This document shows, in pieces, positions 8,258-44,054 of a stretch of DNA of 64,000 nt (positions are counted from its first letter, which is position 1; every line of letters begins with the position of its first letter). The notes beneath the pieces are model-generated. The model did no database searches and was not told where the DNA came from. It saw only the letters and a list, made by a program, of their open reading frames with translations. The stretch spans positions 57,288,001 to 57,352,000 of the forward strand of contig NC_086116.1 in assembly GCF_963921235.1 (NCBI RefSeq), read 5' to 3'. The DNA is from Mobula hypostoma (lineage: Eukaryota). The position numbers and the translations under genes are program-made.

Positions 8258-8466
8258 NNNNNNNNNNNNNNNNNNNNNNNNNNNNNNNNNNNNNNNNNNN
8301 NNNNNNNNNNNNNNNNNNNNNNNNNNNNNNNNNNNNNNNNNNNNNNNNNNNNNNNNNNNNNNNNNNNNNNNNNNNNNNNNNNNNNNNNNNNNNNNNNNNN
8401 NNNNNNNNNNNNNNNNNNNNNNNNNNNNNNNNNNNNNNNNNNNNNNNNNNNNNNNNNNNNNNNNNN
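8258..8466. other. Assembly gap (209 N)
   Basis: Run of N. Confidence 1.
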
Positions 8467-18512: not shown

Positions 18513-18678
18513 ATCATCACAATCCTGAGTCATCTGAGGACAAGAGTGTTTAAAGGTTATTCCTGACACACAGCTCTCTGTGTTAACTTAGTTATTTATT
18601 TGTCATAACTCAGCTCTGATAAAGATTTGCAGAAGATGCTCAAAAGAGGTAACTCATTCTAGTTTTAATTTCAGGACA

Positions 18679-18739
18679 ATGGATTTTACTTTGGCGAGGA
18701 TATTGTTGGCGTTCCTTCTCTTCAGGGAGCTTGAAATGG
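18679..18739 (+). CDS. Exon 1: signal peptide MDFTLARILLAFLLFRELEM(G)
   Basis: ATG in ACAATGG context, hydrophobic core ILLAFLLF, donor G|GTGAGT, phase 1 as is typical for a leader exon before an Ig exon. Confidence 0.8.
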
Positions 18740-21700
18740 GTGAGTGGTTGCCTCTGTGGAGAGATTTGTATAAGTTTGTCAGGTTGATTCTTACAAGTTA
18801 GGAAGGTGACCTTAAGTCACTCAAGTTTCCTGTGATTGTTCTTAGAGTAATTCAAGGATCTAGGAGTAATCCCTTTGCTCAACAAAATAATACGTGTGCA
18901 CGCTCGCACGTGCACGTGCACACACAGACACGCATGCAGACAGACATACAAGCACACACATACACGCACACAGACTCTCAAATACACATGCAGACACAGA
19001 CACACACATCTTCTTTTATTTATTTGTTCATTCTGTTGTCATTTATTCTCTTACTTTCATCTTAATTTCATTTCTGATATTCTCAGCTCAGTTCAAGTTT
19101 AATTATCATTCAACCATACACGAATACAGCCAAACAAAACAGTGTTCCTCTGGAGCCAAGGTGCAACTCACAGTACCAACAGTCACAGACAGCACAATGG
19201 ACATATAGTATCAATAAGATAGCAAGCACATATAAGATGTCAGTAAAATACAGTCACACAAAAAAAATACATCCAAGACCCTGAGTCCGTGAATGTTACC
19301 TGAGTCTGCAGTCGAACACAATACTACTTGTTTTCTGCTGAGCAACCACTGGGGGCTGGCACTGACTCCAGCAAGGAAGCTCCACCAAACTGCCTCTGGT
19401 GGAGCACAATTCTCCAGGGTGGCTGTAAACAGGTGACACTGTGGCTCGGGGTCTCGTCCTCGCTATGACTGAATCCGTACAGTTCACCCGCCATCCACCC
19501 AATAAATCAGTGAATTGTACTTGCAGCGTTCCACATGAGCAATGTCCAGCACGGTCTTGCAATCACAAGAGAAGCTACTAAGACGCTCACTCACTGTTAG
19601 ACTGCACACTGCCTTCACGGACTGACTCCTCCGACACCTCTCTGTCCACACCAAGTCCACTTCCTTCTGTTTCTCTGCCAATGAGCAACTCGCTGATGGG
19701 GTAGGCTTGCAGTAACTTGTCTCCTGCAAGAATCTGAATCTTAATTTCACCTCTAACATCCCTCGTTGTAAAGTAACATCTGAAGAAGTGTAACAGGGAG
19801 CCAGGGGACATGGAAACAAGTCAGTGAGCTAATTGTGACGTGCTGGAAGTTATAGTGAAAAATCTGTTAATGCACAAGACTATGGAGGTAGATGAGCCCA
19901 ACTTTATTCACAAAATAATACATTTTTTAAAAATTTTCTATTGTTTTTACAAGATGCAAAAGTGTGGAGATTCAAGATCAAGATTCCAGATTGTTTATTG
20001 AACTCCAACTTTATTTGCAAGTAATATATATATCTTTATTTCCTGATATTTTTACTAGGTATAGGGTCTTTCTCCCAGTCCTATGGGAAATTGAATGGAG
20101 ATGTCTTGTTGCCCTGCACCTTTCCAGTTGCAGCCAGCCTCAATCTGCACAACCTGGTTATCACATGGCAGCGGACAGACACTCTCACTGTGGTTTACAG
20201 CTTCTACTCTGGATTGGACCATCCAGAGCATCAGGATGCACAGTTCAGAGGCCGCACTCAGCTGTTTCACTCAGAATTCCTCAAAGGGAATGTGAGCCTA
20301 AAATTGGAAAGCATGACATTATTCGACGTGGGTAACTACACCTGCTTTGTATTTGAAGAAGAAGGGACTGAATACACTGAGACCATTGTGGAATTAAGAT
20401 TAAATGGTGAGTGCATGAAATGGTGTGATAGTAAAAGCAAAGTGAGTGAATGACATTGGATCACGCCATACAGAAAAGGATGCTGTCCATCCGACTGTGA
20501 TGTCTGTCTACACCAGTCCCATTAGGCCCACATTCCTCTGTGCCTCTCCCGTCCAGGTACCTTTCTAAATGCCTTTCAGATATTATAATTGAACATGCCT
20601 CTACGAGTACCCTTGGAGCTCGTTCCACATAACCACCTCCCTCTGACTGATCACCTTTAAATTTCTCCTTTCACTGTACGCTAGCTTCAGACTTCCCGCC
20701 CTGGGAAAGATTCCTACTATCTACACAAGCATACCCAATGCTCTATCCACCAATGTCACCACTTTGAGTGAGCTATAGACTTGATTCCAAAGCTCCTCTG
20801 GACATCAGCACTCCTGAGGTCCCAGCCACTTACTATATATCCAACTAGAGTTCAACTTCCCAAATTATATTAGCTCACACTTAAAGTCCATCTGCCACCA
20901 CTCACGTTCCAATTGATTTATGTCCCTTTGTCATTAGAAAGCCTTCTTTACTCTCTATGACTCTTAACAGTCTTCTTGTCTGCAGACTTTCTGATAAGAT
21001 CACCTACATTCTCATCCAAGTAATTTATATGCATTGCAAACAAGAAAGGTCCCAACAAGAAGATCTACAGTGCATCTTTTTCCAGGCAGAGAAACAGCCA
21101 TTCCCCATTACCCTCTGCTTCCTATCTCCGAGACAAACTTGGATCCAGTTTCTCCACGTATTTCAGGTTCACTGTTCTTTCGCCTTCCGGAACCCTCCTA
21201 CCATACAGGACCTTGTCAAAAGTCAAAAAGCCTTACTGAAATCCATGTAATCCCTTCATACCATGTTGCCTTTGTAAATTTTAGACCATAAACCAAGAGC
21301 AGAATTAGGCTACTTGGCCCATTGAGTCTACTCCGCCATTCCATCATGGCTGATTTATTATCCCTCTCAACCCCATTCTCCTGTCTTCTCCACGTAACCT
21401 TTGACATCCTTACTAGAGATGAATCTATCAACCTTTGCTTTAAATATACTCAATGACTTGGCTTCACAGCCATCCGTGACAATGAATTCCACAGATTAAC
21501 GGTCCTCTGGCTAAAGAAATCCTTTTCATTTCTGTTCTAAAGAAACATATTTTTATTCAGAGTCTGTGCCCTCAAGTCCGAGACTTCGCCCTATCCATTC
21601 CATCTACAGTACTGTGCAAAAGTCGCAGGCACATATATATAGTGAGGAAGCCTAAGACTTTTGCACAGAACTGTAATAATATTATGTATTGTACTGTTCT

Positions 21701-24700
21701 GCTGCCACAGAAAAATGAAACAAATTTCATGACATATGTAAGCAATGATAAGCCCGATTCTGATGTTAGTCTCTTGTGGACTCAGAGTGGGAAGGGGGTA
21801 GGGAGAGTGGTTGGGAAAAGGAGAAGGGAGAGATGAGATGGGAGGGAGGAGAAGGCACCAGAAAGACATTCTGTACTGATCAATAAACCAATTGTTTGGA
21901 ATCAAATGACCTTGTCTGGTATCTCAGGGCTGGGTATATCTGCACTCGTTCCAGATTAGAGAAGCTGGTTAGAATGGCAGAACAGGTTGACAAGGAGGAG
22001 GTGATGAAATTTAATAAATATAACTGAATATGATTGGCTTTATTTCCCACATGTACATTAAAGCATACAGTGAAGTGTGTAATTCAGGGATGTAAATATG
22101 TTGAAGTGTGAATTGGGTACATTCGACATTTCGGGCTGAGACGAAACGTAGACTGTACTCTTTCCCATTGATACTGCCTGGCCTGCTGAGTTCCTCCAGC
22201 ATTTTGCATGTGTTGCTTGGATTTCCAGCATGTGCAGATTTTCTCTTGTTTGGAAGTGTGAATTGATGCCTTTTGGCCAAATGAACAAGGAGATTCTAAA
22301 CCAGAGGCTTTAGAGCACAACCCAAAGGATGTGCAGGAAAAAGGTCAGCATGAGCCATTCACTGCCAGAATATGTTAAGAGCATGGTTTGTAATGCTGTT
22401 AAAATCCTACATTTCATTATCAAAGCATGCAGTGCAAAGTTGGGATACTGTGTTGAATCTTTATAAAGTGGTGAGTTTGAATCTGGTTCTAGTGACAATT
22501 TTTAGGGAGGATTTGAAGTTGCTTGAGGAGCTAAGATGTTGAATGGTGAGAGAGATGAAGTTTTTATCTAAGGCTAGTCTGGAGAAGTTAAGATTGTTTT
22601 CCTTGGGGCCAGGAAGGGTGAAAGGAGATTTGATTGAAGTGTAGTAGGTGGTAAAATTATCTCCCACGTGCCTTCAACAAGAGGAACAAAAGTGAGCTTG
22701 GGACTCGGGAATTAATACATAAAGGAAAGGTTAAGTTTCTTGTGAGTAAGGTAGATTGAAAAAGGGGAGATTTTCAGATGAACATCAAAAAAAAAACTGC
22801 AGAGTCTAGAAATGTGAAATAAAAGTGGGAAATGCTGGAAACATGCATCATCTGTGGGAAAGGAAACCGCTGATGTTTCAGGTCTGAAACTATTGCCAGA
22901 ACTGGGAAAGAAGGGAAGTTAATTTTCAACAATCCACATTAAATGATGGGAGGAATGAGGAAAATAAAAAGAATTCCTCTGATGGAATGAAAACAAATGA
23001 GTTAACAGAAGCAGGTGGAATTGGATTGCTTCTTTGTCTATGTAACGTGCTGCTAAGAATAGGACAGCCATGCCCAGCAGCCAGGAATGTACTGGTAGAA
23101 AATTAAAATGGAGCCGTAGATGGCAAATGGAAATGGCTAATTCTGAGATAAACAGAGAGGAAGAGTTATTTGTCTAAAGTTGGAAATTTGGACACAGTCT
23201 GGAAGGCTGCAATGTGCCTTGAAAGAAGGTGAGGTATTGTTCCTTAAGTTAGCTTTGGGTCTTCTTGTAACAGTGCAGGAGGTCATAGAGAGACATGTCT
23301 GTCTGTGTGTAACTCTGTATGAACACTACTCCCATTTCATTTTTTTGTACTATTTATTGTAATTTATAGTAAGTTTATGTCTTTATACTCGACTGCTGTT
23401 GCAAAACAACAAATTTGACACGATATGATAATAAATCTGATTCTGAGCTGCTATCAGACAGGTTTTAATAATCCTCTTAACTATAAGGTAATCAACATTT
23501 ATACATCTCTTTTTTGAGTGGAACATCTTGTGATCATGTTTCATCTCCTTTGCCTATGAGACAGTTTAACCATTTGGTTTTGTTCTTAATATCCTAGATA
23601 CATCACGGATTAATGGAATAGATGCCGCTGGTCCCGCTTCAGAAAGACAACATTATGGATCTCCACCTGCAGTAGTGTTTGTTTTAATCACAGCTGCAAT
23701 TTTACTTTTCCAAATCAAATCCAAGAAGCAACAAGATCTTGAAAGTGAGTAACATATTGAGAAAACTGGGCACTCGCGACACAAACTGTACAACTATAGA
23801 TACAATGGGGGAGCCACAGTGATCCGGTCTCTGGCACTGAGTCTGGTGTTGTGGCTCAGAAAAGCAGAGAGGTAAAGAGGACTGCAGTGTTAATAGCTGA
23901 TTCCTTAGACAGAGGAACAAAGACAAGATTTTGTGGGTATGACAGAGACAACCTCATGGTATTTTGCCTCCGTGGTTCATGATCAGGAATGTCTAGGATC
24001 ATGTCCTTGGTATTCTCAAGGGTGAGGGTGAGCAGCCAGAAGTGTTGGTACATATTGGCATCAATGACATAGGTAGACAAGGTGAGGAGGTCCTGAAGAG
24101 AGATTTTAGGGAGCTGGGTAGAAAGCTGAGAAATGGGATCTCCAGGGTAGTAATCTCGGGATTGTTGCCTGTGCCAAGTGCCAGTGAGGGTAAGAATAGG
24201 ATGATTTGGCAGGTGAATGCGTGGCTGAGGAACTGGTGCAGGGGGCAGGGGTTCAGATTTATGGATCGTTGAAATCTCTTCTGGGGAAGGTATGACCTAT
24301 ACAAAAGGGATGGGTTACATCTGAACCAGAAGGTGTCCAATACCCTTGCGGGCAGGTTGGCTGGAGTTGTTTGGGGGAAATTTAAACTAATTTGGCAGGG
24401 GGATGGGAATCGGAGTGATAGTACAGAAAATGAGTTGGTTTACAAACAGAGGCAATGTGTACTAAGACTCCTAGCAAGGAGAGGCTGAACATAGGGCAAA
24501 ATTACAGTCAACAGGATGAGTTACAACAAAAGGCAGACAAAATCCACAAGGGTGAATATAGGCCTGAAGAAGAAGAAGAAAACCCTTAACTCTGGGTGGA
24601 GTCATCGGGACGCCATTATGACGGTGTTTTTTTAGCAGGCTTTCTTATTTTTACGAGGCCAAGTTGCTAGCTCGACACTCAACCCAGCACGGATGGAAAG

Positions 24701-27700: not shown

Positions 27701-30700
27701 TGTTTACAAGGATTAAATGTCAGGAATCATGAAAAACTGAGTTTAAATGTATTTGGCTAAGGTGTATGTAAACTTCTGACTTCAACTGTATGTTAAAGGC
27801 AAGATGACACAACCATGGCTAACAAGAGAAGTCAAAGCCAAAATAAAGGCAAAAGAGAGGGCATATAATAGAGCAAAAATTTGTGGGAAGTTAGAGAATT
27901 GGGAAGCTTTTAAGTACCAACAGAAGGCAACTAAACAAGTCATTGAGAAGGTAAAGATGGAACACGAATGTCAGCTAGCCAATAATTTTAAAGAGTATTC
28001 CAAAATGTCGGACGAACTGACTAAGTACTTTGCATTGGTCTTCACTGTGGAAGACACCAGCAGTATGGTGAAAGTTCCAGGTGTCAGGGGGCATGACGTG
28101 TGTGAAGTTACCATTACTAGAGAGAAGGTTCTTGAGAAACTGAATGGTCTGAAGGTAGATAAGTCACCTGGTCCAGATGGTGTACACCCCAGGGTTATCA
28201 AAGAGGTGGCTGAAGAGATTGTGGAGGCAGTAGTAATGATCCTTGAAGAATCACTAGATTCTGGAATGGTTCTGGAAGACTGGAAAATTGCACACGGAGG
28301 AATTTAAAGTTGCTGACCGTCTCCACCTCTGATCTTCCAATGAGACCAACTGATAGACCTCTGGTTTCCCTCTCCTGAAGTCAATAATGAGCTTCTTGGT
28401 CTTGCTGATGTTGGGTAAGAGGTAGTTGTTACGACACTGCTCAGCCAGATTTTCAATCTCCCTCTTGTATGCTGATTCATCACCACCTTTGATTGGTGAA
28501 TGTTAAATGTGTACGGTATAGACTGTGATTGATTCAGTTACATGAATTGGTTAATCAACCAAGGAAATTGCCTTTAGCATTGGATGTGTGTATCTAGATG
28601 ACAAACATTATTGTGATGGTTGCATTCTGCATTAATGTTGTGAGGGTAATTGTCTGGATTTCCCCAACAAGTATTTGGCATTCCACAGATTTTTTAGTAT
28701 CTTCTCTGAAGGTTGAGTTGAAAGGCAGCAGGTAACTTGGCTGAGGAGTGAAAGACACTTCTTTAAGCACCTTTCAGCACCTGACTATAGAATTGCCTTA
28801 CTGCCAGTGAGAAAGGGAGCCAAGTGGCATCAGTGCCAAGCAAGTGGGATATCGAACCTCTTCCAATACTGATCCACACAGGTCACATAACAATGTTCTT
28901 TGTTTTCTGTCACCATAACAGGTATTGTGTTTGACTTCTGAAAGCTTACTAACGTTACTATTAAACCTTGTCAAATAGTTAAACATTTATGTTAAGTTCA
29001 CCCCAGCTAAATTAATTAAAGTTCAAAGTACATTTATTATCAAAGTATGTAATCTTGAGATTTGTCTCTTTACAGTCAGCCACAAAATGAAGAAAACCAA
29101 TAGAACCCATTAAAGAGACCTTCAGACACCCAATATACAGAAAACAACAAACTGTGCAAACAATAAAAAGTAGGCAAATAACATTCATAACTTAAGTTCA
29201 CAAAAGTGAGTCCACAGCCACGAAGCCAGTCCTCAGTGCAGCTGATCCAGGAGCCCGTTAGTTGCAGGCTGCAGCCCCAGCAGCCCATTGTACTCTGGCA
29301 CAGAACTTCATTATCCTGGTGAAGATGCCTGGTGTAATGTGCTGATGTTATTACAACTCCCCACCAGTTCCCAGCCACAGAGAATGCAACATGCTTTCAG
29401 AGGAACAGACACTGACTTGTGCTTTATTCTGTTTTTTTTCAGAGATCCATTTACTGGGAGACGATATAAAAGGTAAAGAGATGAATTGCACAGAGTTTTC
29501 ACCCACAACAGTATATGTGGTTTCCTTGTCCGCTGCAATAATCAGCCATAGAGCCGTGTGATATTAATAGTTTTAGAATATGGTCAAGCAATGAATTAAT
29601 GTTTAAAATGAAGACTTCTGAAAGAAAGAAGGCGCAAAATATACATTTTTAACAATCCAGTAATGTTTAGAAGTATATATTGACCAGTAGTTAAAAAGGC
29701 CATGACTTGCTTAGGCACGCACACTCCTTTCAGAAAACATCCAGTATCTTAACTAATTCTGTGGTTATTTATTCTTTAAGACATGAGAGAAGAGCCATGC
29801 AAGTGGGGAGACAAGAAAGCCTGTAACCTTTCAAAGCTCTGTTGGACAAACTTGTTAATCCTTACTTGAACCCAGTATATCCAATTGAATTAGAAAATTT
29901 GATGTAGGTTTTCTAGACAATTTAAAGATTTCACTTTCTTTTTTTTTTGCTGTGTGCGTGTGCGATGTTGGCGGGACGATGTCTTTTTCATGCCTTTACA
30001 AGGCGCGGCGTGAGAGAGAGAGACTGCGGGGCGCACCACTTCTCACACAGACATTTCACAGTATTTTTCCCTTTATTTTACGAGGTCGAGTTGCGATCTC
30101 GACACTCAACCAGGCACGGATGGAAAGCGTACTCAGGAGCGGACCTGACTGGTTTCGAACCCGGGAACCTCCGCTCCCGGGTCCGGCGCTGATATCAATG
30201 CGCCACCTGCCAGCCCAAGATTTCACTTTTTTGACATGGGTATGAATTTCAGCCTGGTTTCAAAATTATGGATGTCTTTCAGCATCTAGTGATGAGTTTA
30301 TAATGACCTCACAAATTGCTTGTCCTAATATCCCGTGTGATGTGAAATAGCAGATGCTGGCATTTTGATGTGGGTTAAGGTAGCAGGTGAAGTTCCCTGA
30401 ATTTTGTCATCTCTTCATCATTTTGGATGAATAACATTGGACAACAAAGATTTTGCTTCCTGAATTCTTTTGGGTGTATCTTAGGAATTTTGGGCTGCTG
30501 ATCAGGAAAATCACCATGAAATTTTGACAATTCAAAGAACTGCTTGTGGGACCAGAGAAAAAAAATCACAAACTTTTTTTTTAAATGATCTTAATTTGTT
30601 ATTCCCATTCATAATTCAAGTTAATTAAAATGTTGCCCACAATGTAAGCTGAAAAGTTTTCTATCTTGTCCAGGGATGCCAGGGCCTGGTAAGGCAGAGC

Positions 30701-33700: not shown

Positions 33701-36700
33701 CTAAATTCCCACTAATTTTTGCTTATTATATGCCCTCTCTTTGGCTTTTATGCTGGTTTTGACTTCACTTGCTAGCCACAGTCGTGGCATCTTGCCTTTA
33801 GAATACTTCTTTCTCTTTGGGATGTACATATCCTGTGTCTTCCGAATTGCTTCCCAAAATTCCAGCCAATGCTGGTCTGCTGTCTTCCCTGCCAGTGTTC
33901 TTTTCCAGTCACTTCTGGCTCACTCCTCTCTCAAGCGTTTACTTCATTGTAATACTAATACATCTGACTTTAGCTTCCTTGCTTTTAATATTGTAGTCCT
34001 CTTGAAATGAATGCTAGCATTGCATTTGCTGTCATAAATGATGCCCATTTCTGATTTGTGCATTTTTAGCATTTGTTAATCTGTAATAGAAAACTTACAA
34101 ATTCTGAGAAACGTCTCTTTCTGTCCAGCTGTGATACAGGATTACAAAGAATACATCATGAGAGACCAAGCACGTTCATGTTGCACAGTGATGCGAAAGA
34201 GATTCATGAACAACAATTCATTTGCCGGATCCATTAATACCATCGCTGTAAAGAAACAGGACCCAGGCAGTGACCTTATCACAGCAGGGGTGTTGAATAT
34301 TGCAAAAGAAATGGAAGTTTCAGAACTGCTGTCTTTACTTCAGAAGGATAAGTCATCGAAGAGAATCCTGCTGGTAGGTGATACAGGAGTTGGGAAAAGT
34401 TGGGCTGTGGACAGCATGGAGCAAGACTGGGCATCTCATCCAAGCCATGGGTTGTATTGTGTCATTGTTCTCAAGTTCTCTGACTTAAATCAGGTTAGAG
34501 GAAAGACCACTCTCCGGGAGCTTCTGAAGAAGCAGTGCCAGCCTTTGTCATCAGTCCTAACGCAGGTCCTCCAAAACCCTCAAGATGTGCTGATCATTTT
34601 GGATGGACTTGACGAATTTGGCTTTCAGCTTCAATGCAATTCTTTGGGTTGTGATTTGAACCTAGACAGCGTGGCTGAAGTAAGTGTTCTTGTTTCCAAA
34701 CTTATATCCAAGCATCTCCTTCGAGACGCAAAGGTGCTGGTTACCTCCCGATGGAATGCAAAGCAGTTAGAAGTTAACAAGAAGCATTTTGATCAGCATT
34801 TTATTATCACTGGCTTTTCCAGTGATAGGTTGAAAAGGTATTGTGATATGTTTTATGCGGAAAAGGAGAAGGCAGCAATAATGTACCAGCACATTACGGA
34901 GAATGAGACCATCAAATGCCTGGCTTCTAATCCCCTCAACAGCTACATTCTGTGCACCATTTTGGACAGATGTTTCCACTGTTATGAAATAAAGTCAGAT
35001 TCATTAATGACAAACAGTAAGGTTTTTAAATTGCTGCTTTACTGTATGATTAACTGTAAAGCCAATGATATTGATGAGACTGACCTGGAGTATGAATTGT
35101 TTATGGACACCATCCTAAAGGTAGGGCAACTGTCCTTCAACACCCTGCTTTCAGCCAAAGTTGAAATGAATGCAGTTGATCTGAAAGCCTACAGAATAGA
35201 GCAATCTCTGCTTTCAAAGTACCTCTCAAATTTTGTTCTGGAAAAGAAATATAATGATGAAGGTTCTTTTGAGTTCCATCACGTGGTGCTGAAAGAACAA
35301 TTTGCGGCTTTGTATTGTGCAACCTTACTGGATAAGGATCCTGTAGAGCTGGTCAAATGTCTGGATCTTTGGTGCTTTGGGAAGAGGCCACAAAATCAAT
35401 TGAGTCAATTTTATCTGCAATCATTCCGCCCTGAACACACCGAAAAGCTGTACAATTTTACCAGGTTTCTCATGGGTTCCTTAACAGCAGGAAGAGAAGG
35501 CAAGTTGTGGAATTATACAGTTCCTCTCACTCCTTCTACAGCCAGAGCTCTCAGGACATGGTTTAAAACCAACCTTGAGCAGGATATTAACAAGGCAGAA
35601 TTGCTGAATTTAATGCATTGTCTATTTGAATTGCAAGATCTGGATGTCACAGCTGATGTGTCTCCATACATAAAGAGTATAGATTTTTTCAATATGTCTT
35701 TGAGCCCCCTGGACGTGTCTGCTTTACATTACTGCCTGAAACACTCTGCAGTGGAAAAGTTGGATCTGAGACTCTGTAACCTCGGTGATGAAGGGATAAA
35801 GCAGCTGACGGATGTGCTTTTCAAATGCAAAACACTTTTGTGAGTAATACTTTTCTTAAGACTACTAAGCCCAAGTTGCAGTAATTTATTTTGTTGTATA
35901 CTCTGCGTATATGCTGTTCACATTCTTTGTCCTGAATTTGGTGATTCTGTACTGTCCTGACCAAAGTCCGTTCTTTCATGTGGTGATGCCACTTTTCAAA
36001 GCAACAATGGCAATAGACACTACCAGTGCAATAAATACCAGGCCACCAGTGCAGCGTAGCAGTTAGTGTGATGCGATTACAGAGTTCAGAGTTCAGTTCC
36101 AGTGCCCTCAGTGAGCAAGTTTGTATGTTCCTTCCCGTTTCCGTGTGGGTTTCCTCCAGGTGATCCGGTTTCATCTCACAGTCCAAGGTTACACCAGTTA
36201 GTCGGTGAATTGGTCATTGTAAATTGTCCCATGATTAGGCTCGGGTAACTGGGCAGTGCGGCTGGAAGGGCCAGAAGGGCTTGTTCTGCACTGTATCTCC
36301 ACCAGTTACGTGGTGCCATCATAACCCTCTCCTCAACCATTCCTGATGGCATAACCGTTCTGTTTGGTTCTGGCCATACATTCTGTTTGCAAAGACTTTA
36401 TTGATCTCTATAAAAAGATCTAGTTTCCTTTGTCTGGTGCAAATGTACTTGCTGTGGAATATGGTCTTTCTGTAATTCGTAGCCCACCACATCTTCAACA
36501 GAACAGCAGCAAAGGACTCTTTCAACATCCTGACGAAGGGTCTCGGCCTGAAACGTCGACTGCACCTCTTCCTAGAGATGCTGCCTGGCCTGCTGCGTTC
36601 ACCAGCAACTTTGATGTGTGTTGCTTTCAACATTTATTCCTGAATCAAAGCAGTTTGACTACTCACATCACACTGTTTCAAGAATCACCCCTTGTAATAA

Positions 36701-39700
36701 TGAAGAGTGAGGCACAGAGGATCTGTATTTACTGACAATTAACTTGTATTGTCCAAACTAAAAAGAACATGAGTTCACAAACTAACTGTGTGTACACCCT
36801 ACTAAAATCCCTGAACCTCCATGAACAGTCAATGAAGAGAAAAGGTATTATCGGGAGACGATTCTACGCTGGCCAGGCGTTCCTCATGGTCCGGATCTCC
36901 ACGTGTCTGTGGGTCCTCCTTATCCATGATGGCTGGTCTCTGGTTGCTGGAGAGTAATGCTCCTGTGTTTTTGGAGCTCCTGCCTCTTATAGTGTTCCTC
37001 ATCAATTGAACCATTGGATCTCTGTCCCATTTGCTCAAGGTCACCTGACCTACCTGGATCACCTCCTCACTGGTCATTGTACAGGGCTACAGCCAACATT
37101 GTTTCATGGTTCTGCTCACCCTAGCCTTACATTTGTGTCTCTCAACTCTGACCGGTCCGAACCAGCTAAATGAGGCGAACCAGACATCGAGATTACAGAT
37201 CACTTCTATGGTAGGCCTGGCATTTTACATAAGTAGCTACTTATCTGAGAATGGTCTCAGATTTAGCAGATCATCACTTGAGTGAGGTTCCTTGTGCCAA
37301 GCACCTACGCACCCTCCACCAGAAAAATGGGATCTCCCAGTGGCCACCAACCTTAATTCCACTTCCCATTTCTATTCCACCATGTCCATCCATGGCCTCC
37401 TCTACTGTTGCAATGAGGCGACACTCAGGTTGGAGGAGCAACACTTTATATTCCATTTGGGTAGCCTCTAACCTGGTGGCATGAACATTGATTTCTTGAA
37501 CTTCTGGTGATGTCCCCTCCTTCACCATTCCCCATCCCCTTTTCCCTCTCTCACCTTATCTCCTTATATACCCTCTGGTGCTTCGCCTCACTTTTCTTTC
37601 TTCCATAGCCTTCTGTTCTCTTAGAATCTCCCTTCTCCAGCCTTCTATCTCTCTCACCAATCAACTTCCCTGCTCTTTACTTCTCTCCTCGCCCTCCCAG
37701 TTTCACCTGTCACCTTGTGTTTCTCCTCCTCCACCTTCCACCTTCGAACTCTGACTCCTCATCTCCTTTTCTCCAATCCTGCTGAAGGGTCTCAGCCCGA
37801 AACATCAACTGCACTCTTTTCTATAGATACTGCCTGGGCTGCTGAGTTCCTCCAGCATTTTGTGTGTGTTGCTTATATTTACGGCATCTGCAGATTTTCT
37901 GTTGTTTGTAACTGAACCTCTTGACCATGTCTGCATGCTTTTGTGCTTTGTGTTGGTACCACATGACTGTCTGATTAGATATGTTCATTAATGACTGGGT
38001 GTGTGTACGGGTACGGTGTAGGCACTGGGTGTGAGTACGGGTACAGTGTGGGCACCGGGTGTGAGTACGGGTACGGTGTGGGCACCAGGTGTGTGTACGG
38101 GTACGGTACGGGCACCGGGTGCAAGTACGGGTACGGTACGGGTATCGGGTGCGAGTACGGGTACGGTATGGGCACCGGGTGTGAGTACAGTTATGGTATT
38201 GGCACTGGATGTGCGTACGGGCACAGTGTGGGCATGGTTGAATTCAATCTGATTTGTGTAGGAAATATTTCCCTCCCCCTCCCCCCAACAGAAACAGGAT
38301 CTCTTAATCATATAGCCATCTGAAGATTATGCTCATTTATAAATAAATAGAAAAGATTATAAATAATATAAAGATATTGCTTGTTATCTCCGTTCTCCTC
38401 ACTGTGCCCCAAGTGTTTATTTTCAGGCTGTCCTCCCGCTCAGCAGTTTGTGAGGCTGGAGTTCTCCAAATTAATCGTTTTCATTGCCTTGTGTTCCAGG
38501 ATAAGCTCCAACAAACTGACCGAGGAGTCAGCAGAGATTTTGAGTGGTATCCTTCAAAACCCAGAATGCAGAATAGAGACGCTATCGTGAGATTTTTCAT
38601 CACATAAATCTTCATGTAAAATTTTTCATATTTCACTTGAAACTGTAATCCCTCATATTTGCTGTTTGGTTCTGTTTTCAGGTGTGGTACAAACTGTTTT
38701 GGTTCCGCAGGAGCTCGGTCTTTGTGGAAAGCTCTGGCAGGGAACAATAGTCTCAAAGTCCTTCGTTTGTATGACAATGGGATTACAGACGATGGCATAG
38801 AGGACATGATCCAGTACCTGAGACTGAACACAACTCTCCAGAAACTCTTGTAAGTATTTGGTAGATGAGTGTGTGCCTGTGATATGCAGTTTATTTCAAA
38901 AATATCCACGTCAACATGTGTACACCTGCACATGTCCTCTGTGGTGTTCTGTACCAGGCAAGGAGCAACTGGTAACACAGATACAGAGATAGCTAGATGG
39001 CAGTGTGAAATGTGAGGAGGATGTTATGAGAATGCAGGGTGACTTGGACAGGCTGGATGAGTGAGCAGATACATGGCAGATGCAGTTTAATGTGGATAAA
39101 TGTGAAGTTATCCACTTTGGTGGTAAGAACAGGAAGGCAGATTATTATCTAAATGGAGTCAAGTTAGGAAAAGGGGAAGCACAATGAGATCTAGGTGTTC
39201 TTGTACATCAGTCACTGAAAGCAAGCATGCAAGTACAGCAGGCAGTGAAGAAAGCTAATGGCATGCTGGCCTTCATAACAAGGGGAATTGAGTATAAGAG
39301 CAAAGAGGTCCTTCTGCAGCTGTACAGGGCCCTGGTGAGACCACACCTGGAGTACTGTGTGCAGTTTTGGTCTCCAAATTTGAGGAAGGATATTCTTGCT
39401 ATTGAGGGAGTGCAGCGTAGGTTCACAAGGTTAATTCCCGGAATGGCGGGATTGTCATATGTCGAAAGATTGGAGCGACTGGGCTTGTATACTCTGGAAT
39501 TTAGAAGGCTGAGAGGGGATCTTATTGAAACATATAAGATTATTAAAGGATTGGACACGCTGGAGGCAGGAAGCATGTTCCCACTGATGGGTGAGTCCAG
39601 AACCAGAGGCCACAGTTTAAGAATAAGGGGTAGGCCGTTTACAATGGAGTTGAGGAAAAACTTTTTCACCCAGAGAGTGGTGGATATATGGAATGCTCTG

Positions 39701-42700: not shown

Positions 42701-44054
42701 TTACTTGCAATATCAATCAACATTCACAAAACAGGTGTTAAAAGTCAATAGAAACTACAAGCTATGTTACTTTGAATTTAGTAAAGGAGTTGTCCCTTTG
42801 TTGGTCTGTGTATTTTGCATCTTTTTGTTCTATTCTTTTCTCGTCTGCAGGAAGCCAAAATGGCTCCAGTAATCTGTTATGCATAATGGAAGCTATGCTT
42901 TTCAAAGACCGTTATTGCCTGGTTTGTCTGCAATCTGTCCTTGCCCAGATATTATGTTAACCCTTGCCTTACTGCAACTTGCACAGGTGGTCAAAACTGA
43001 GTTTTCTTGATTCTTGGTTTACAGTACTGTACAAAGGTCTGAGGCACATATATATAGCTAAGGTTAGTAATGTTATTATTGCACTGGACTGCTGATGCAA
43101 AAAAAAACAACTCCATGGGTCAATGTGAGTAACGATAAACCTGACAGACTGTTGTGTGAGGCCTGATGGACTGTCTACTGTGGACTGAGAACAGGAAGGG
43201 GGCAGGGAGAGTGGACTCATGGTTGGGAAAAGGGGAAAGGAGAGGGGAGGGAGTGGTAAGCATCAGAGAGACATTCTGTAATGATCAATAAACCAATTGT
43301 TTGTAATCAAAGTCCTGGCATTCCTTCTCTGCCACCTGTGCCACACCCTTCCTGAGGCGATTCATTCCCAACATCCTTTGCTCCCACCAGAGTTACAAAC
43401 TTGATTTCCTCTCTATGTTGACAAATACAGAGCTGTGAAAAGGTCTATGCACCTTAGCTGTTTATATGTGGGATATGGGGAGAAGGCAGGAACTGGATAC
43501 TGATTGTGGATGATCAGCCATGATCACAGTGAATGGCCGTGCTGGCTCGAAGGGCCGAATGGCCTACTCCTGCACCTATTGTCTATTGTCTATGTGCCTA
43601 AGACTTTTGCACAGTTCTGTATATACATACACTTGAAGCATCTGCTAAAGATAATTTCCTTCTTGTTTTCAGTATATGTGCAAACAACTTCAGTGATGTT
43701 GCACAGAGAAACATTGCACAGGTGGAGTCATGTTGTGGGCTGCAAGTCATCACTAAAATCAAAGATGATGAAGAGCTCTTACAACGAGTTGAAACGCAGG
43801 TCGAAGAACTGCTCTCTTCCTGTCCAAAGTATGACAAGGAATGGCTTCAGAAAATACTGAGAACGATTTTAAAAGACCTGGAGGATGAGAGCTGCATACC
43901 TGACCAAAGGACCCGTGCTAAGGTTGGAAAGATAAAAGCAAATATCAACAAGCTTCTTCAGAAGAGCAAGAATGCAGCAGATAATGATCCAAGCCATGAA
44001 AGAAGGGTGCAGTTCCTGACCACTTCGTCACTTTCTTTGCAGGATATCGTATAA
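18679..44054 (+). CDS. Predicted 8-exon gene, 977 aa: signal peptide-IgV-TM-NACHT-LRR-helical tail (transmembrane NLR-like receptor)
   Basis: join(18679..18739,20059..20406,23598..23744,29443..29472,34129..35839,38500..38586,38682..38849,43673..44054). All introns are GT-AG, with phases 1,1,1,1,2,2,2. Total 2934 nt = 978 codons, no internal stop, ending TAA at 44052-44054. Confidence 0.8.
18890..19010. repeat. Degenerate (CA)n/(CAGA)n microsatellite in intron 1
   Basis: cacacacagacacgcatgcagacagacatacaagcacacaca... Confidence 0.9.
20059..20406 (+). CDS. Exon 2: IgV domain, B7/butyrophilin-like
   Basis: Acceptor TTTTTACTAG|, donor G|GTGAGT, phase 1-1, 348 nt. Motifs DVLLPCTF, VITWQR, QFRGRTQLF, GNVSLKL and DVGNYTC are canonical V-set Cys/Trp positions with B7-family signatures. 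Confidence 0.93.
21605..21950 (+). mobile_element. Non-autonomous repeat with a Tc1-TIR-like hairpin end (copy 2)
   Basis: TACAGTACTGTGCAAAAGTCGCAGGCAC...GCCTAAGACTTTTGCACAGAACTGTA, then a Rex1-like tail and the purine-rich body. Confidence 0.7.
23598..23744 (+). CDS. Exon 3: stalk plus transmembrane helix plus basic stop-transfer segment
   Basis: Acceptor TTTTGTTCTTAATATCCTAG|, donor A|GTGAGT, 147 nt, phase 1-1. Encodes (D)TSRINGIDAAGPASERQHYGSPP-AVVFVLITAAILLFQI-KSKKQQDLE. Confidence 0.8.
24563..24784 (-). mobile_element. tRNA-derived SINE with (TTC)n tail
   Basis: On the minus strand, A box TGGCATAGTGG and B box GAGTTCGAATCC; TSD GAATATAGG at 24554-24562 and 24785-24793. Confidence 0.85.
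25350..26030 (-). mobile_element. Penelope-like element fragment
   Basis: GIY-YIG remnant (LYIGET..RLGDSFAEHL) and a terminal repeat carrying a hammerhead motif. Confidence 0.8.
25414..25450 (-). ncRNA. Minimal type I hammerhead ribozyme motif (Penelope-associated), core intact
   Basis: Minus strand reads AGTC-CTGACGA-AGGGTCTCAGCCT-GAAAC-GTC^GACTG: stem I AGTC/GACT, conserved CUGANGA and GAAA, palindromic ACGT stem III. Confidence 0.7.
26156..27788 (+). mobile_element. Tc1/mariner element of the Sleeping Beauty (IR/DR) type, 1633 bp
   Basis: TA TSD; TIR CAGTTGAAGTCAGAAGTTTACATACAC; inner DRs at about 26352-26380 and 27570-27597; DD34E transposase remnant WSDETK, QMDNDPKH and SPDLNPIE. Confidence 0.95.
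26590..27565 (+). pseudogene. Sleeping-Beauty-like transposase pseudogene
   Basis: Start codon region replaced by an inverted copy of the 3' end; in-frame stops at SIM*W (about 27122) and RLT*VK (27527-27529). Confidence 0.9.
29443..29472 (+). CDS. Exon 4: 30-nt cytoplasmic microexon (K)IHLLGDDIK
   Basis: Strong acceptor CTGTTTTTTTTCAG|, donor G|GTAAAG, symmetric phase 1-1, open frame. The model stays in frame if this exon is skipped. Confidence 0.6.
29938..30216 (-). mobile_element. tRNA-derived SINE, young copy, in intron 4
   Basis: B box GGGTTCGAAACC, poly(A) tail, 13-bp TSD AAGATTTCACTTT (29925-29937 and 30217-30229), CpGs retained. Confidence 0.88.
30240..32465. mobile_element. DNA transposon remnants, probably Chapaev (CMC superfamily), with a Rex1 3' end inserted at about 31250-31760
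   Basis: FPRITNAKIKEGICVGLQMK...KIHFLHSHLDFFPEKPGAVGDKYGERFH at 32145-32465, with a related piece at 30500-30570. The superfamily assignment is recalled from the motif and not searched. Confidence 0.55.
32465..33985 (-). mobile_element. CR1 LINE fragments ending about 145 bp before the NACHT exon
   Basis: ORFs 32683-32931 and 33070-33639 (NYRQVSLTSVVGRMLESI), plus a CR1 3' tail. Confidence 0.85.
34129..35839 (+). CDS. Exon 5: linker, NACHT NTPase, winged helix/HD2 and first LRRs
   Basis: Acceptor TCTCTTTCTGTCCAG| (phase 1), donor TT|GTGAGT (phase 2). Walker A GDTGVGKS at 34377-34400, Walker B VLIILDGLDEF, sensor-1 KVLVTSR, ITGFS, NPLNSYILC, FHHVVLKEQFAALY, RFLMG, NLMHCLFELQD, then LRR KLDLRLCNLGDEGIKQL. 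Confidence 0.95.
36040..36300 (+). mobile_element. V-SINE (HE1-like), degenerate
   Basis: Core gtttgtatgttccttcccgtttccgtgtgggtttcctccaggtgatccggtttc...gtccaa and a CR1-like tail. Confidence 0.7.
36526..36562 (+). ncRNA. Minimal hammerhead ribozyme motif (Penelope-associated), core intact, weak stem I
   Basis: CTGACGA at 36530-36536, then AGGGTCTCGGCCT-GAAAC-GTC^GACTG. Confidence 0.6.
37260..37910 (+). mobile_element. Penelope-like element 3' fragment
   Basis: GIY-YIG remnant, pyrimidine-rich tail and degenerate hammerhead (CTGCTGA...GAAAC) at about 37780. Confidence 0.75.
37994..38233. repeat. Minisatellite, 8 x 30 bp, in intron 5
   Basis: Unit about ACCGGGTGTGAGTACGGGTACGGTGTGGGC, no spacers, built from degenerate hexamers. 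Confidence 0.95.
38500..38586 (+). CDS. Exon 6: one RI-type LRR
   Basis: Acceptor TTGTGTTCCAG|, donor TC|GTGAGA, 87 nt, phase 2-2. Encodes (L)ISSNKLTEESAEILSGILQNPECRIETL. Confidence 0.88.
38682..38849 (+). CDS. Exon 7: two RI-type LRRs
   Basis: Acceptor TCTGTTTTCAG|, donor TT|GTAAGT, 168 nt (2 x 28 codons), phase 2-2. Encodes CGTNCFGSAGARSLWKALAGNNSLKVLRLYDNGITDDGIEDMIQYLRLNTTLQKL. Confidence 0.92.
38985..39900 (+). mobile_element. CR1 LINE 3' end, well preserved
   Basis: ORF 39227-39814 (LYRALVRPHLEYCVQFWSP...RRLRGDLIETYKI), then a 3' UTR with CTATTGT tail. Confidence 0.9.
40310..41880 (-). mobile_element. CR1 LINE RT to 3' end
   Basis: GVPQGSVLGPMLF, KYADDTKIGG and VVYMDFSKAFDKVPH in ORFs 40387-42049. 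Confidence 0.9.
43001..43620 (+). mobile_element. Non-autonomous repeat with hairpin remnants at both ends (copy 3); right hairpin split by a CR1 tail
   Basis: Left arm at about 43001-43028, shared body, right arm at about 43427-43454, CR1 tail at about 43470-43592, closing arm GTGCCTAAGACTTTTGCACAGTTCTG ending near 43618. Confidence 0.65.
43673..44054 (+). CDS. Exon 8 (terminal): last LRR plus about 105-aa charged helical tail
   Basis: Acceptor TTCCTTCTTGTTTTCAG|, phase 2. (F)ICANNFSDVAQRNI completes the LRR begun in exon 7, and the frame stays open for 126 codons to TAA. Confidence 0.8.

What the first reader, a model, noticed from the sequence alone, without database searches (positions are those of the whole stretch)
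18679..44054. Predicted transmembrane NLR: extracellular B7/butyrophilin-type IgV fused through a TM helix to a cytoplasmic NACHT-LRR
Seen in sequence: eight exons with canonical splice sites join without a stop into 977 aa. The TM exon has no stop and ends at a strong phase-1 donor (A|GTGAGT). The NACHT exon has no ATG start of its own and opens at a phase-1 acceptor. The 10.4 kb between them is almost entirely transposon debris, and I found no CARD, PYD, IgC or B30.2 exon there. Three N-glycosylation sequons lie in the predicted ectodomain (NVS, NYT, and NDT formed across the exon 2/3 junction), and the TM is followed by KSKK, as expected for type I topology. Established knowledge: vertebrate NLRs are cytosolic with N-terminal CARD, PYD or BIR domains, while butyrophilins are IgV(-IgC)-TM-B30.2. 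Inference: this is a surface or endomembrane receptor in which extracellular ligand binding or clustering could drive NACHT oligomerisation, or in which LRR sensing signals outward. I cannot confirm from here that the architecture is undescribed. The hydrophobic stretch is short (about 16 residues).
Basis: partly seen in the sequence, partly recalled or inferred. Interest (0 to 1): 0.95.

Follow-up and report, generated by a model that had tools for sequence, protein, structure and literature searches.

The report
Membrane-spanning NLR with B7-type ectodomain
Rays, skates and sharks share a real gene that joins an outward-facing B7-like immunoglobulin domain, through one membrane helix, to an NLR innate-immune sensor that is normally free in the cytoplasm; I found no description of this design in a vertebrate.

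Summary
The eight exons join with GT-AG sites into 977 aa, which is RefSeq isoform X3 of a Mobula hypostoma gene auto-named "NLRP6-like/NLRP1 homolog". A ninth upstream coding exon (7533-7570) gives the 991- and 995-aa isoforms.

The architecture is signal peptide, B7-H4/B7-H3-type IgV, stalk, one TM helix with a basic stop-transfer, a 30-nt exon completing an invariant ExxxLL motif, NACHT-WHD-HD2, about seven LRRs and a three-helix cap.

- **Conservation:** 16 proteins from 15 ray, skate and shark species form one clade (100/100). Hypanus has the same coding exons and little skate the same exon order.
- **Transcript evidence:** a little-skate RNA contig maps to its genome as nine spliced blocks and joins IgV, TM, mini-exon and NACHT. 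Skates also make a short 214-aa IgV-TM form from an alternative exon in intron 4.
- **Origin:** the nearest relatives are frog and lizard NLRs that carry an N-terminal CARD instead, so exon shuffling probably replaced the effector.

Function is untested. I favour an endocytic outside-in receptor (about 0.4) over butyrophilin-like inside-out signalling (about 0.3). The only precedent I found is the sea-cucumber Ig-TM-NACHT receptor AjNLRC4. It is a new variant of a known kind, with interest about 0.7.

The parts
7533..7570 (+). Alternative 5' coding exon holding an upstream ATG. It adds 14 residues (isoform X2) or 18 residues (isoform X1) in front of the signal peptide.
   Evidence: The exact reconstruction of P0001 needs this exon. 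The isoforms are listed.
18675..18739 (+). Exon 1, with the ATG at 18679. It encodes the signal peptide (hydrophobic core ILLAFLLF, probable cleavage after G-I-G). A second acceptor lies 12 nt upstream at 18663.
   Evidence: The best 8-residue hydropathy is 3.39 at residue 8, with similar N-termini in the orthologues. AF2 models an N-terminal helix at residues 4-18.
20059..20406 (+). Exon 2: a B7-type IgV domain (phase 1-1), with the canonical Cys40, Trp57 and Cys116.
   Evidence: Pfam V-set 4e-10. PDB sequence matches are CD276 3.6e-25 and B7-H4 1e-16. AF2 pLDDT is 88-98, and Foldseek gives B7-H4 IgV at TM 0.84. dN/dS is 0.36 against skate.
23598..23744 (+). Exon 3: disordered stalk, TM helix, the basic stop-transfer KSKK, and the Glu that begins the ExxxLL motif.
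   Evidence: Kyte-Doolittle 19-residue peak of 2.12. AF2 models a helix at residues 160-181. The TM plus basic cluster is conserved in position in all full-length orthologues.
29443..29472 (+). Exon 4: a 30-nt mini-exon that completes the acidic dileucine motif (EKIHLL in Mobula).
   Evidence: Canonical acceptor and donor. The exon is present with the same 30-nt length in Hypanus and little skate. The ExxxLL motif is invariant in 16 of 16 TM-bearing orthologues.
34129..35839 (+). Exon 5: juxtamembrane helix, NACHT NBD, HD1, WHD, HD2 and the first LRRs.
   Evidence: Pfam NACHT 1.8e-22 and NLRC4_HD2 2.4e-15. It is 100% identical to P0001. Walker A GDTGVGKS, Walker B LIILDGLDE, sensor-1 TSR and the WHD His are invariant.
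38500..38586 (+). Exon 6: one LRR (87 nt).
   Evidence: The exon has the same size in Hypanus.
38682..38849 (+). Exon 7: two RI-type LRRs (168 nt).
   Evidence: Pfam LRR_6.
43673..44054 (+). Exon 8: the last LRR, a three-helix C-terminal cap, a disordered tail and the stop codon.
   Evidence: AF2 models helices at 884-900, 907-920 and 929-954; in the 10-residue block means this stretch runs mostly 73-88, with one block at 55 covering the loop between the first two helices. The tail is shared with the tetrapod CARD-NLR relatives.

Best explanation
This is a genuine, single-copy-type elasmobranch gene. The window comes from Mobula hypostoma, where RefSeq names the gene 'NLRP6-like / NLRP1 homolog'.

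**What it encodes.** It encodes a type I single-pass membrane NLR. The parts, in order, are:
- a cleavable signal peptide;
- one B7-H4/B7-H3-like IgV facing outside or into the lumen;
- a short stalk, one TM helix and a basic stop-transfer;
- a cytosolic acidic dileucine motif (ExxxLL) that is completed by its own 30-nt exon;
- a complete and apparently ATPase-competent NACHT-WHD-HD2 module;
- about seven LRRs and a three-helix cap.

There is no CARD, PYD, BIR, IgC or B30.2 domain.

**Shown here.** The exon model is exact, the domains are identified, and 16 proteins from 15 shark, ray and skate species keep the architecture. The coding exon structure is identical in Hypanus, and the exon order is the same in little skate. 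A spliced little-skate transcript carries all parts in one reading frame.

**Strongly inferred.** The topology is IgV out and NACHT in. The gene arose once in the elasmobranch stem by exon shuffling: the phase 1-1 leader, IgV and TM exons of a B7/butyrophilin-like gene took the place of the CARD exon that the sister clade (frogs, lizard) still has.

**Mechanism I commit to (inferred, about 0.4).** It is an endocytic receptor. Ligand binding or cross-linking of the IgV at the surface or in endosomes or phagosomes brings the cytosolic NACHT modules together. That relieves LRR autoinhibition and nucleates an ATP-dependent oligomer on the cytosolic face of the membrane. The ExxxLL signal sends it through clathrin adaptors. 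In skates a short IgV-TM-ExxxLL isoform lacking the NLR would act as a decoy or competitor.
For: - **Exon model.** It is an exact match to P0001 with GT-AG sites.
- **Domains.** Pfam finds V-set, NACHT, HD2 and LRR.
- **IgV kinship.** The closest solved sequences and structures are B7 family.
- **NLR fold.** Foldseek and PDB sequence searches place the cytosolic part with NOD2, NLRP9 and NLRP3.
- **Membrane segment.** One TM plus a basic cluster is found in every full-length orthologue.
- **Sorting motif.** ExxxLL is invariant at one alignment position in 16 of 16 orthologues, although its surroundings evolve at dN/dS of about 1. Its density elsewhere in these proteins is 0.28 per 100 aa.
- **Family spread.** V-set plus NACHT is recorded in most elasmobranch hits and in nothing else. 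None of 149 other close IgV relatives has a NACHT.
- **Single origin.** The ML tree puts the IgV-TM NLRs in one clade (100/100) with a shark/batoid topology, sister to the CARD-NLRs of frogs and Lacerta (94/93). Those relatives have a CARD.
- **Conserved exon structure.** Hypanus has the same eight exons.
- **Transcript.** Little-skate transcript L001 is 99% identical to Leucoraja erinacea XP_055509288.1 and maps as nine spliced blocks to the skate genome.
- **Selection.** dN/dS is 0.36 for the IgV and 0.29 for the NACHT exon.
- **Short isoform.**
- **Functional precedent.** AjNLRC4 has an extracellular Ig domain that binds bacteria and an intracellular NACHT, and it drives phagocytosis (PMC8699970).
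Against: - No Mobula transcript was available, so the junctions are shown only in a skate.
- SignalP and DeepTMHMM could not be run. The signal peptide and TM rest on hydropathy, conservation and modest-confidence AF2 helices (pLDDT about 50-60).
- The Mobula TM core is short.
- Isoforms X1 and X2 put 14-18 extra residues in front of the signal peptide.
- There is no known signalling domain on the cytosolic side, so an outside-in output is unexplained.
- B7-family IgVs are usually ligands for receptors on other cells rather than microbe sensors, which fits inside-out signalling at least as well.
- ExxxLL is a short motif.
- Both Amblyraja copies lack the first canonical IgV cysteine.
- Predicted isoforms without the TM exon (Stegostoma X2) exist.
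Confidence: 0.75

Rival explanations
1. Inside-out signalling, following butyrophilin logic. The cytosolic LRR-NACHT senses an intracellular ligand or stress and oligomerises. This clusters or re-shapes the B7-type IgV on the cell surface, and the IgV is then read by a receptor on lymphocytes or NK-like cells. The IgV sits in the N-terminal 'effector' slot of the NLR.
For: - The IgV is closest to B7-H3, B7-H4, PD-L1 and BTN3A, all of which are ligands for receptors on other cells.
- The IgV replaces the CARD of the sister clade at the same N-terminal position.
- The LRR and NACHT are kept under purifying selection, at 0.38 and 0.29.
- No cytosolic effector domain exists.
- From established knowledge, not tested here: the BTN3A1 B30.2 domain senses phosphoantigen inside the cell and signals through its ectodomain.
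Against: - No counter-receptor is known.
- The LRR is short (about seven repeats) and capped.
- The ExxxLL endocytic signal and a decoy-like short isoform fit a receptor somewhat better.
- Nothing here tests the direction of signalling.
Confidence: 0.3
2. Anchor only. The signal peptide, IgV, TM and ExxxLL merely place an otherwise ordinary cytosolic NLR sensor on the cytosolic face of a particular membrane (endosome, phagosome or lysosome). There it could, for example, guard vacuole integrity. The IgV would have no signalling role, or only a cis or homophilic one.
For: - The conserved sorting motif and the short TM in batoids suggest an endomembrane location.
- From established knowledge: NOD1 and NOD2 (by palmitoylation) and NLRP3 (at PI4P membranes) need membrane recruitment.
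- The stalk and TM evolve almost neutrally.
Against: The IgV is under purifying selection over the shark-batoid divergence, with an invariant core. A lipid anchor or a plain TM would be enough for tethering alone.
Confidence: 0.2
3. Two genes read as one. A small IgV-TM gene and a downstream NLR gene are joined only by read-through or minor splicing and by automatic annotation, and the main products are separate proteins.
For: - Skate short transcripts end the ORF after exon 4 in an alternative exon, with an AATAAA 48 nt before the NACHT acceptor.
- The Mobula NACHT exon has an in-frame ATG.
- Lungfish has a stand-alone IgV-TM protein whose IgV is 45% identical.
Against: - The full-length spliced skate transcript exists.
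- No alternative first exon, CARD or PYD for the NACHT exon is found in 64 kb.
- The NACHT exon starts in phase 1 at a conserved acceptor in Mobula and Hypanus, and little skate has the matching acceptor and junction.
- The in-frame Met is not conserved.
- The V-set plus NACHT model recurs in independent annotations of about 15 species.
- The NACHT tree mirrors the species tree with the IgV always attached.
Confidence: 0.05
4. A decaying or non-functional relic of a chance exon-shuffling event.
For: dN/dS is fairly high between Mobula and Hypanus (IgV 0.69, LRR 1.28 on few sites). Amblyraja has lost one Ig cysteine.
Against: The reading frame is intact in 16 proteins from 15 species. The ATPase motifs are invariant. 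dN/dS is 0.3-0.4 over the longer comparison. The gene is expressed in skate.
Confidence: 0.03

Closest known systems
Tetrapod CARD-NACHT-LRR proteins auto-named 'NLRC3-like / NLRP12-like' (Spea, Pelodytes, Rhinophrynus, Leptobrachium, Lacerta; P0015-P0019)
   Same: They form the sister clade in the NACHT tree (94/93) and are 28-31% identical over the NACHT exon. They share the same NACHT-WHD-HD2, short LRR and helical C-terminal tail.
   Different: They carry an N-terminal CARD and have no signal peptide, IgV or TM. The elasmobranch proteins sit on a long stem branch of 1.47.
B7 family / butyrophilins (B7-H4/VTCN1, B7-H3/CD276, PD-L1, MOG, BTN3A1)
   Same: The layout is leader, IgV and TM as a type I protein, with phase-1 exons. 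These are the best sequence and structure matches of the ectodomain. Like butyrophilins, the protein couples an ectodomain to an intracellular sensor-type domain.
   Different: There is no IgC domain and no B30.2. The cytoplasmic part is a 780-residue NLR.
Sea cucumber AjNLRC4 (PMC8699970) and AjNLR-new (PMC13133943)
   Same: These are membrane-localised NACHT proteins with Ig domains. AjNLRC4 has an extracellular Ig and an intracellular NACHT and acts as a surface receptor for bacteria.
   Different: AjNLRC4 has two Ig-type domains and two TM segments, and it lacks LRRs. AjNLRC4 and AjNLR-new are echinoderm proteins. Given the vertebrate B7-type IgV and the vertebrate NLR sister clade, it is most likely an independent invention.
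Mammalian NOD2, NLRP3, NLRP9 and NLRP1
   Same: They are the best solved-structure relatives of the cytosolic part, and the ATPase motifs are the same.
   Different: They are cytosolic and carry CARD or PYD effectors and longer LRRs. The RefSeq names 'NLRP6-like' and 'NLRP1 homolog' imply a PYD that is absent.

Membership tests
NLR (NACHT-LRR STAND ATPases) | NACHT NTPase domain with Walker A, Walker B and sensor-1 | tested here: met
   Pfam NACHT 1.8e-22. GDxGxGKS, DGLDE and TSR are invariant in 16 sequences.
NLR (NACHT-LRR STAND ATPases) | Winged-helix and HD2 modules with the conserved WHD histidine | tested here: met
   NLRC4_HD2 2.4e-15. NOD2_WH is found in the shark orthologue. H580 is invariant. 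Foldseek gives NOD2 5.9e-32.
NLR (NACHT-LRR STAND ATPases) | C-terminal ribonuclease-inhibitor-type LRRs | tested here: met
   LRR_6 hits. The AF2 model has seven LRR beta-strands. There are RI and NLRX1 matches.
NLR (NACHT-LRR STAND ATPases) | N-terminal death-fold or BIR effector domain and a soluble cytosolic protein | tested here: not met
   No CARD, PYD or BIR is found in the protein or in the 64-kb window. A signal peptide, IgV and TM are present instead.
NLRP subfamily (the RefSeq name) | N-terminal pyrin domain | tested here: not met
   Pfam finds no PYD in P0001 or P0011. The name comes from automatic best-hit transfer.
B7 / butyrophilin family | Leader plus an IgV with the canonical disulfide and Trp, closest to B7 IgVs | tested here: met
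   V-set 4e-10. CD276 3.6e-25 and B7-H4 1e-16. TM-score 0.84 to the B7-H4 IgV. C40, W57 and C116 are conserved.
B7 / butyrophilin family | Membrane-proximal IgC domain | tested here: not met
   The IgV exon is followed directly by the stalk/TM exon. No IgC exon is found with a shark butyrophilin query.
B7 / butyrophilin family | Cytoplasmic B30.2 (PRY/SPRY) domain (butyrophilins) | tested here: not met
Type I single-pass membrane protein | Cleavable signal peptide, one TM helix and positive-inside flank | tested here: inconclusive
   Hydropathy, the basic cluster, conservation and AF2 helices all agree. No dedicated predictor (SignalP, DeepTMHMM) or experiment was available.
Echinoderm membrane NLRs (AjNLRC4 type) | Ig domain(s) outside, TM, NACHT inside; homology of the fusion | not tested
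   The architecture was compared from the paper only.
Acidic dileucine-sorted membrane proteins | [DE]xxxL[LI] in the cytosolic tail that binds AP complexes | tested here: inconclusive
   The motif is present and invariant in 16 of 16 sequences. Adaptor binding cannot be tested with these tools.

The most novel reading that the evidence does not exclude
A single polypeptide wires cytosolic NLR sensing directly to the display of a B7/checkpoint-type ligand. NACHT oligomerisation inside the cell clusters the IgV outside, giving lymphocytes or NK-like cells a direct read-out of intracellular danger. This would be an NLR whose 'effector domain' is extracellular, and it would have been present in the elasmobranch ancestor.
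Probability: 0.25. Interest if true: 0.9.

Novelty: new variant of a known kind. Interest (0 to 1): 0.7.

Why it matters
Vertebrate NLRs are textbook cytosolic sensors that signal through CARD, PYD or BIR domains. A conserved, expressed NLR that spans a membrane and carries a B7-type IgV would be a third way of coupling the two sides of a membrane in vertebrate innate immunity, beside TLRs (LRR out, TIR in) and butyrophilins (Ig out, B30.2 in).

It would show that the N-terminal effector slot of an NLR can be filled by an extracellular domain. It is also a clean, datable example of exon shuffling between two immune gene families.

The hypotheses are directly testable in the little skate or catshark:
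- topology;
- ExxxLL-dependent trafficking;
- ligand or counter-receptor of the IgV;
- the direction of signalling;
- the role of the NLR-less short isoform.

It also flags misleading RefSeq names ('NLRP6-like', 'NLRP1 homolog', 'NOD1-like', 'NLRC3-like') for one orthologous group.

Tried and rejected
- **Lungfish IgV-TM protein.** A word-index search with P0202, meant to map a donor family, returned only P0202 itself. Its gene spans 108 kb, so no DNA or neighbours could be read.
- **N-terminal search.** The word-index search with residues 15-215 found only batoid orthologues and one shark butyrophilin. It missed the shark orthologues, so it says little about distribution.
- **Full-length AF2.** With a 35-row alignment the N-terminal 160 residues came out at pLDDT 30-45. 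A separate run with an IgV-rich alignment fixed this.
- **Skate alternative exon.** It has no detectable counterpart in Mobula intron 4.
- **Mobula birostris locus.** The 977-aa isoform is not on record. I did not fetch the longer isoform's locus, because its range would span the stretch orthologous to the masked N run at 8258-8466.
- **Literature.** Seven full-text searches (shark/elasmobranch/cartilaginous fish with NACHT and Ig or V-set, 'transmembrane NLR', and similar) found no vertebrate description. The library holds open-access papers only.
- **Holocephalans.** No chimaera orthologue appeared. That search is limited to proteins of 313-997 aa that share words with the query, so absence is not shown.
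- **Rejected: gene-fusion artefact.** See the rival explanations.
- **Rejected: C-terminal tail as a death-fold effector.** It models as a three-helix cap on the LRR and is shared with the CARD-bearing relatives.

Full report
**1. The observation**

I re-read the claimed exon borders and rebuilt the coding sequence. The NACHT exon (window 34131-35840) is 100% identical to an NCBI protein of Mobula hypostoma: P0001 = XP_062929062.1, 991 aa, 'NACHT, LRR and PYD domains-containing protein 6-like isoform X2'.

An exhaustive search over GT/AG sites gives one solution that translates exactly to P0001. Its exons are 7533-7570, 18675-18739, 20059-20406, 23598-23744, 29443-29472, 34129-35839, 38500-38586, 38682-38849 and 43673-44054.

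That matches P0001 from residue 15 and is the length of RefSeq isoform X3 (P0204). Isoforms X1 and X2 add an upstream ATG exon and use two acceptors 12 nt apart.

Small corrections:
- The NACHT exon does contain an in-frame ATG 11 codons in, but most orthologues have Leu at that position.
- There is a ninth coding exon.
- The transposon content of the 10.4-kb interval was verified only for several ORFs: L1-type endonuclease, Tc1/mariner HTH plus DDE, and RT-like.
- No CARD-, IgC- or B30.2-like exon is detectable anywhere in the window with frog, lizard, salamander and lungfish CARDs and a shark butyrophilin as queries.

**2. What the parts are**

*Ectodomain.* Exon 2 is a V-set domain (Pfam 4e-10). 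Its closest solved relatives by sequence are:

| Relative | E-value |
|---|---|
| CD276/B7-H3 | 3.6e-25 |
| B7-H4 | 1e-16 |
| PD-L1 | 1e-12 |
| MOG | about 4e-11 |
| BTN3A | about 6e-9 |

. With an IgV-rich alignment, AF2 models residues 21-135 at pLDDT 88-98. The best structural match is the human B7-H4 IgV (TM 0.84, 1.6 A, 33% identity), followed by PD-L1, MOG, B7-H3 and BTN3A1. A search of 1.84 billion representatives with the IgV gave 3260 hits. The sampled names of the closest ones are BTNL2, VTCN1, MOG, pIgR-like and multi-IgV 'hemicentin-like' proteins of gar, teleosts, frogs and turtles.

*Signal peptide and membrane segment.* Exon 1 encodes a typical signal peptide: a basic residue, an 8-9-residue hydrophobic core and small residues before Ser-Phe-Ser, seen in most of the orthologues. 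Exon 3 encodes a disordered stalk and the only strong hydrophobic segment of the protein, followed by KSKK. The same arrangement is present in every full-length orthologue, with cores of 15-21 residues. AF2 draws it as a helix at 160-181, though only at pLDDT of about 60.

*Cytosolic part.* This is a complete NLR:
- NACHT (1.8e-22), NLRC4_HD2 (2.4e-15) and LRR_6.
- Invariant Walker A, Walker B, sensor-1 Arg and WHD His.
- AF2 10-residue block means mostly 70-94.
- Best solved relatives are NOD2, NLRP9, NLRP3, NLRP1 and NLRC4.
- About seven LRR strands are followed by a three-helix cap and a disordered end.

**3.

The 30-nt exon 4, together with the last codons of exon 3, spells E-x-x-x-L-L. 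This is EKIHLL in Mobula and EKVCLL, EMIHLL, EKAPLL, EEMPLL and so on in the others.

The Glu is conserved in at least 90% of sequences and the two Leu are invariant, in all 16 TM-bearing orthologues and at one alignment position. Yet the stalk/TM/juxtamembrane segment as a whole evolves at dN/dS of about 1. The motif occurs at only 0.28 per 100 residues elsewhere in these proteins.

From established knowledge, [DE]xxxL[LI] is the acidic dileucine signal read by the AP-1, AP-2 and AP-3 clathrin adaptors in cytosolic tails of membrane proteins. I take this as independent support for the topology, because the motif must face the cytosol. It also hints that the protein is internalised or resides in endolysosomal membranes. 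This is inference; adaptor binding is untested.

**4. Is the fusion real?**

Four lines of evidence say yes.

- **Independent annotations.** The word-index search returned 14 elasmobranch proteins with 56-100% identity over the NACHT exon, most with V-set and NACHT recorded together. They come from Mobula, Hypanus, Hemitrygon, Pristis, a skate RNA contig, Rhinoraja, Narcine, Pristiophorus, Mustelus, Heterodontus, Scyliorhinus, Stegostoma and Chiloscyllium. Their 90% clusters add Mobula birostris, Amblyraja and Leucoraja. The next hits fall to 28-31% identity and have no V-set.
- **Same exon structure.** The Hypanus sabinus gene has the same eight coding exons (61, 345, 138, 30, 1711, 87, 168 and 328 nt) with GT-AG borders.
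- **A spliced transcript.** A 3341-nt Logan contig from RNA run SRR11241622 (L001) has an uninterrupted 982-codon ORF that is 99% identical to Leucoraja erinacea XP_055509288.1. It maps to the little-skate genome (L006) as nine blocks. These include IgV 5220-5568, TM 7559-7709, the 30-nt exon 12434-12463 and the NACHT exon from about 14132.
- **Selection and phylogeny.** dN/dS between Mobula and skate is 0.36 for the IgV exon and 0.29 for the NACHT exon. In an ML tree of the NACHT-to-C-terminus region, the 16 IgV-TM proteins form one clade (100/100) whose internal topology separates sharks from batoids, as expected for orthologues.

None of the 149 other closest IgV relatives contains a NACHT. 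The combination is therefore specific to this one lineage and arose once.

**5. A second product**

Skate RNA assemblies from at least three runs (L002-L004; proteins P0080 and P0215-P0218) carry exons 1-4 and then a different exon, which ends the ORF after 12 codons at 214 aa.

On the skate genome this exon starts at a canonical acceptor inside intron 4 (L006 13178) and runs at least to 14051. It has an AATAAA at 14083, 48 nt before the NACHT acceptor.

So the locus also yields a signal peptide-IgV-TM-ExxxLL protein without the NLR, probably through an alternative terminal exon; the 3' end was not seen. I found no counterpart of that exon in the Mobula intron.

**6. Origin**

The sister group of the elasmobranch clade (94/93 support) is a set of frog and lizard NLRs with an N-terminal CARD, the same NACHT-WHD-HD2, a short LRR and a similar helical C-terminal tail. 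They have no TM.

The leader, IgV and TM exons are all phase 1-1, and the NACHT exon opens in phase 1. The simplest reading is that a B7/butyrophilin-like leader-IgV-TM cassette was shuffled in front of the NACHT exon in the elasmobranch stem, replacing the CARD.

A lungfish stand-alone IgV-TM protein (P0202, 207 aa, 'MOG-like') has an IgV 45% identical to the Mobula one and a similar basic stop-transfer. It shows what the donor may have looked like. No chimaera orthologue appeared, but the searches cannot exclude one.

**7. How it most likely works**

*Shown:* the architecture, its conservation and its expression.

*Inferred with good support:* type I topology with the IgV outside or in the lumen, and an ATP-binding, oligomerisation-competent NLR on the cytosolic face.

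*Direction of information flow is open.*
- **Outside-in receptor (about 0.4, my preferred reading).** It follows the usual logic of type I receptors. An endocytic signal is present. The NLR-less short isoform looks like a decoy. The one experimentally studied Ig-TM-NACHT protein, sea-cucumber AjNLRC4, binds bacteria with its Ig domains and drives phagocytosis (PMC8699970).
- **Inside-out signalling (about 0.3).** The butyrophilin-like alternative is almost as good. B7-type IgVs are normally ligands for receptors on other cells. The IgV occupies the NLR's effector slot. No cytosolic effector domain exists.
- **Pure anchoring (about 0.2).** This cannot be excluded.

**8. Comparison with the known, and novelty**

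The protein is a member of the NLR superfamily by every catalytic and structural criterion. It fails the criteria 'N-terminal death-fold effector' and 'soluble cytosolic'. It is not an NLRP, because it has no PYD, despite its RefSeq names. Its ectodomain is a B7-family IgV, but it lacks the IgC and B30.2 domains that define B7 proteins and butyrophilins.

Membrane NACHT proteins with Ig domains have been described in a sea cucumber (PMC8699970, PMC13133943). Those differ in domain number, TM number and lack of LRRs, and they are probably an independent invention.

Seven full-text searches found no description of such a protein in any vertebrate. The whale-shark NLR survey does not mention it. 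The library covers open-access papers only, so this is not proof of absence.

I therefore rate it a new variant of a known kind. The sequences are already public but mis-named and apparently unrecognised. Interest is 0.7.

**9. Limits**

- There are no Mobula RNA data.
- No SignalP, DeepTMHMM or glycosylation predictor was available.
- There is no tissue information for the SRA runs.
- Pfam scans were run on only two of the orthologues here (P0001 and P0011); V-set calls for the others come from the precomputed annotations.
- The N run at 8258-8466 lies in the first intron and was left untouched.

Noticed in passing
window 23740-23744 + 29443-29460 (residues 185-190 of the 977-aa model): An acidic dileucine motif E-x-x-x-L-L spans the exon 3/4 junction. 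It is invariant in all 16 TM-bearing orthologues although the surrounding segment evolves almost neutrally. It is a candidate AP-adaptor sorting signal.
   Followed up: partly
L006 13178 to at least 14051 (little skate genome); L002-L004: Skate transcripts splice the 30-nt exon to an alternative exon inside intron 4, giving a 214-aa signal peptide-IgV-TM-ExxxLL protein without the NLR. An AATAAA lies at L006 14083, 48 nt before the NACHT acceptor. No counterpart was found in the Mobula intron.
   Followed up: partly
L002-L004 against L006 7559-7709: In the short skate transcripts the stalk/TM exon is only 94-95% identical to the reference and has a 3-nt indel, while neighbouring exons and the alternative exon are mostly 95-100% identical (one is 96.8%, and the L002 alternative exon 95%). 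This could be an allelic polymorphism or a second copy centred on the TM exon.
   Followed up: no
window 7533-7570 and 18663/18675: There is an upstream coding exon with its own ATG, and two tandem acceptors 12 nt apart. Together they give isoforms that put 14 or 18 extra residues in front of the signal peptide. The effect on targeting is unknown.
   Followed up: partly
P0209, P0211 (Amblyraja radiata, two loci): Both Amblyraja copies have Ser in place of the first canonical IgV cysteine (LLPSAF against LLPCAF in other skates). Amblyraja also has the gene on two different contigs.
   Followed up: no
P0012 (Pristiophorus japonicus, 855 aa): This is a paralogue with a stalk, a TM and a basic cluster, but its model has no signal peptide or IgV. 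Its Walker A reads GDVAAGKS, and it has EKTPFL in place of ExxxLL.
   Followed up: no
P0013 (Stegostoma tigrinum isoform X2): This predicted isoform skips the stalk/TM exon in frame, joining the IgV directly to the juxtamembrane segment. It would put a NACHT behind a signal peptide without an anchor.
   Followed up: no
window 37997-38234: A 30-bp minisatellite of 7.9 copies at 83% match lies in the intron between the NACHT exon and the first LRR exon. It reads as Gly/Tyr-rich ORFs on both strands.
   Followed up: no
window 44922-48290 (+), 26384-27529, 40893-42049 (-), 51795-52268 (-): Transposon remains surround and fill the gene. There is a LINE-like element with endonuclease and RT ORFs just downstream, Tc1/mariner HTH plus DDE pieces in intron 3, and RT fragments in the last intron and beyond. 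No second host gene was found in the 64 kb.
   Followed up: partly
window 8258-8466: A run of 209 N lies in the intron between the alternative 5' exon and exon 1.
   Followed up: no
P0202 (Protopterus annectens, 207 aa, gene range 108 kb): The lungfish 'MOG-like' stand-alone IgV-TM protein has an IgV 45% identical to the Mobula one and a similar K/Q-rich stop-transfer. It may be related to the donor of the cassette. Whether a NACHT exon lies downstream could not be checked.
   Followed up: partly
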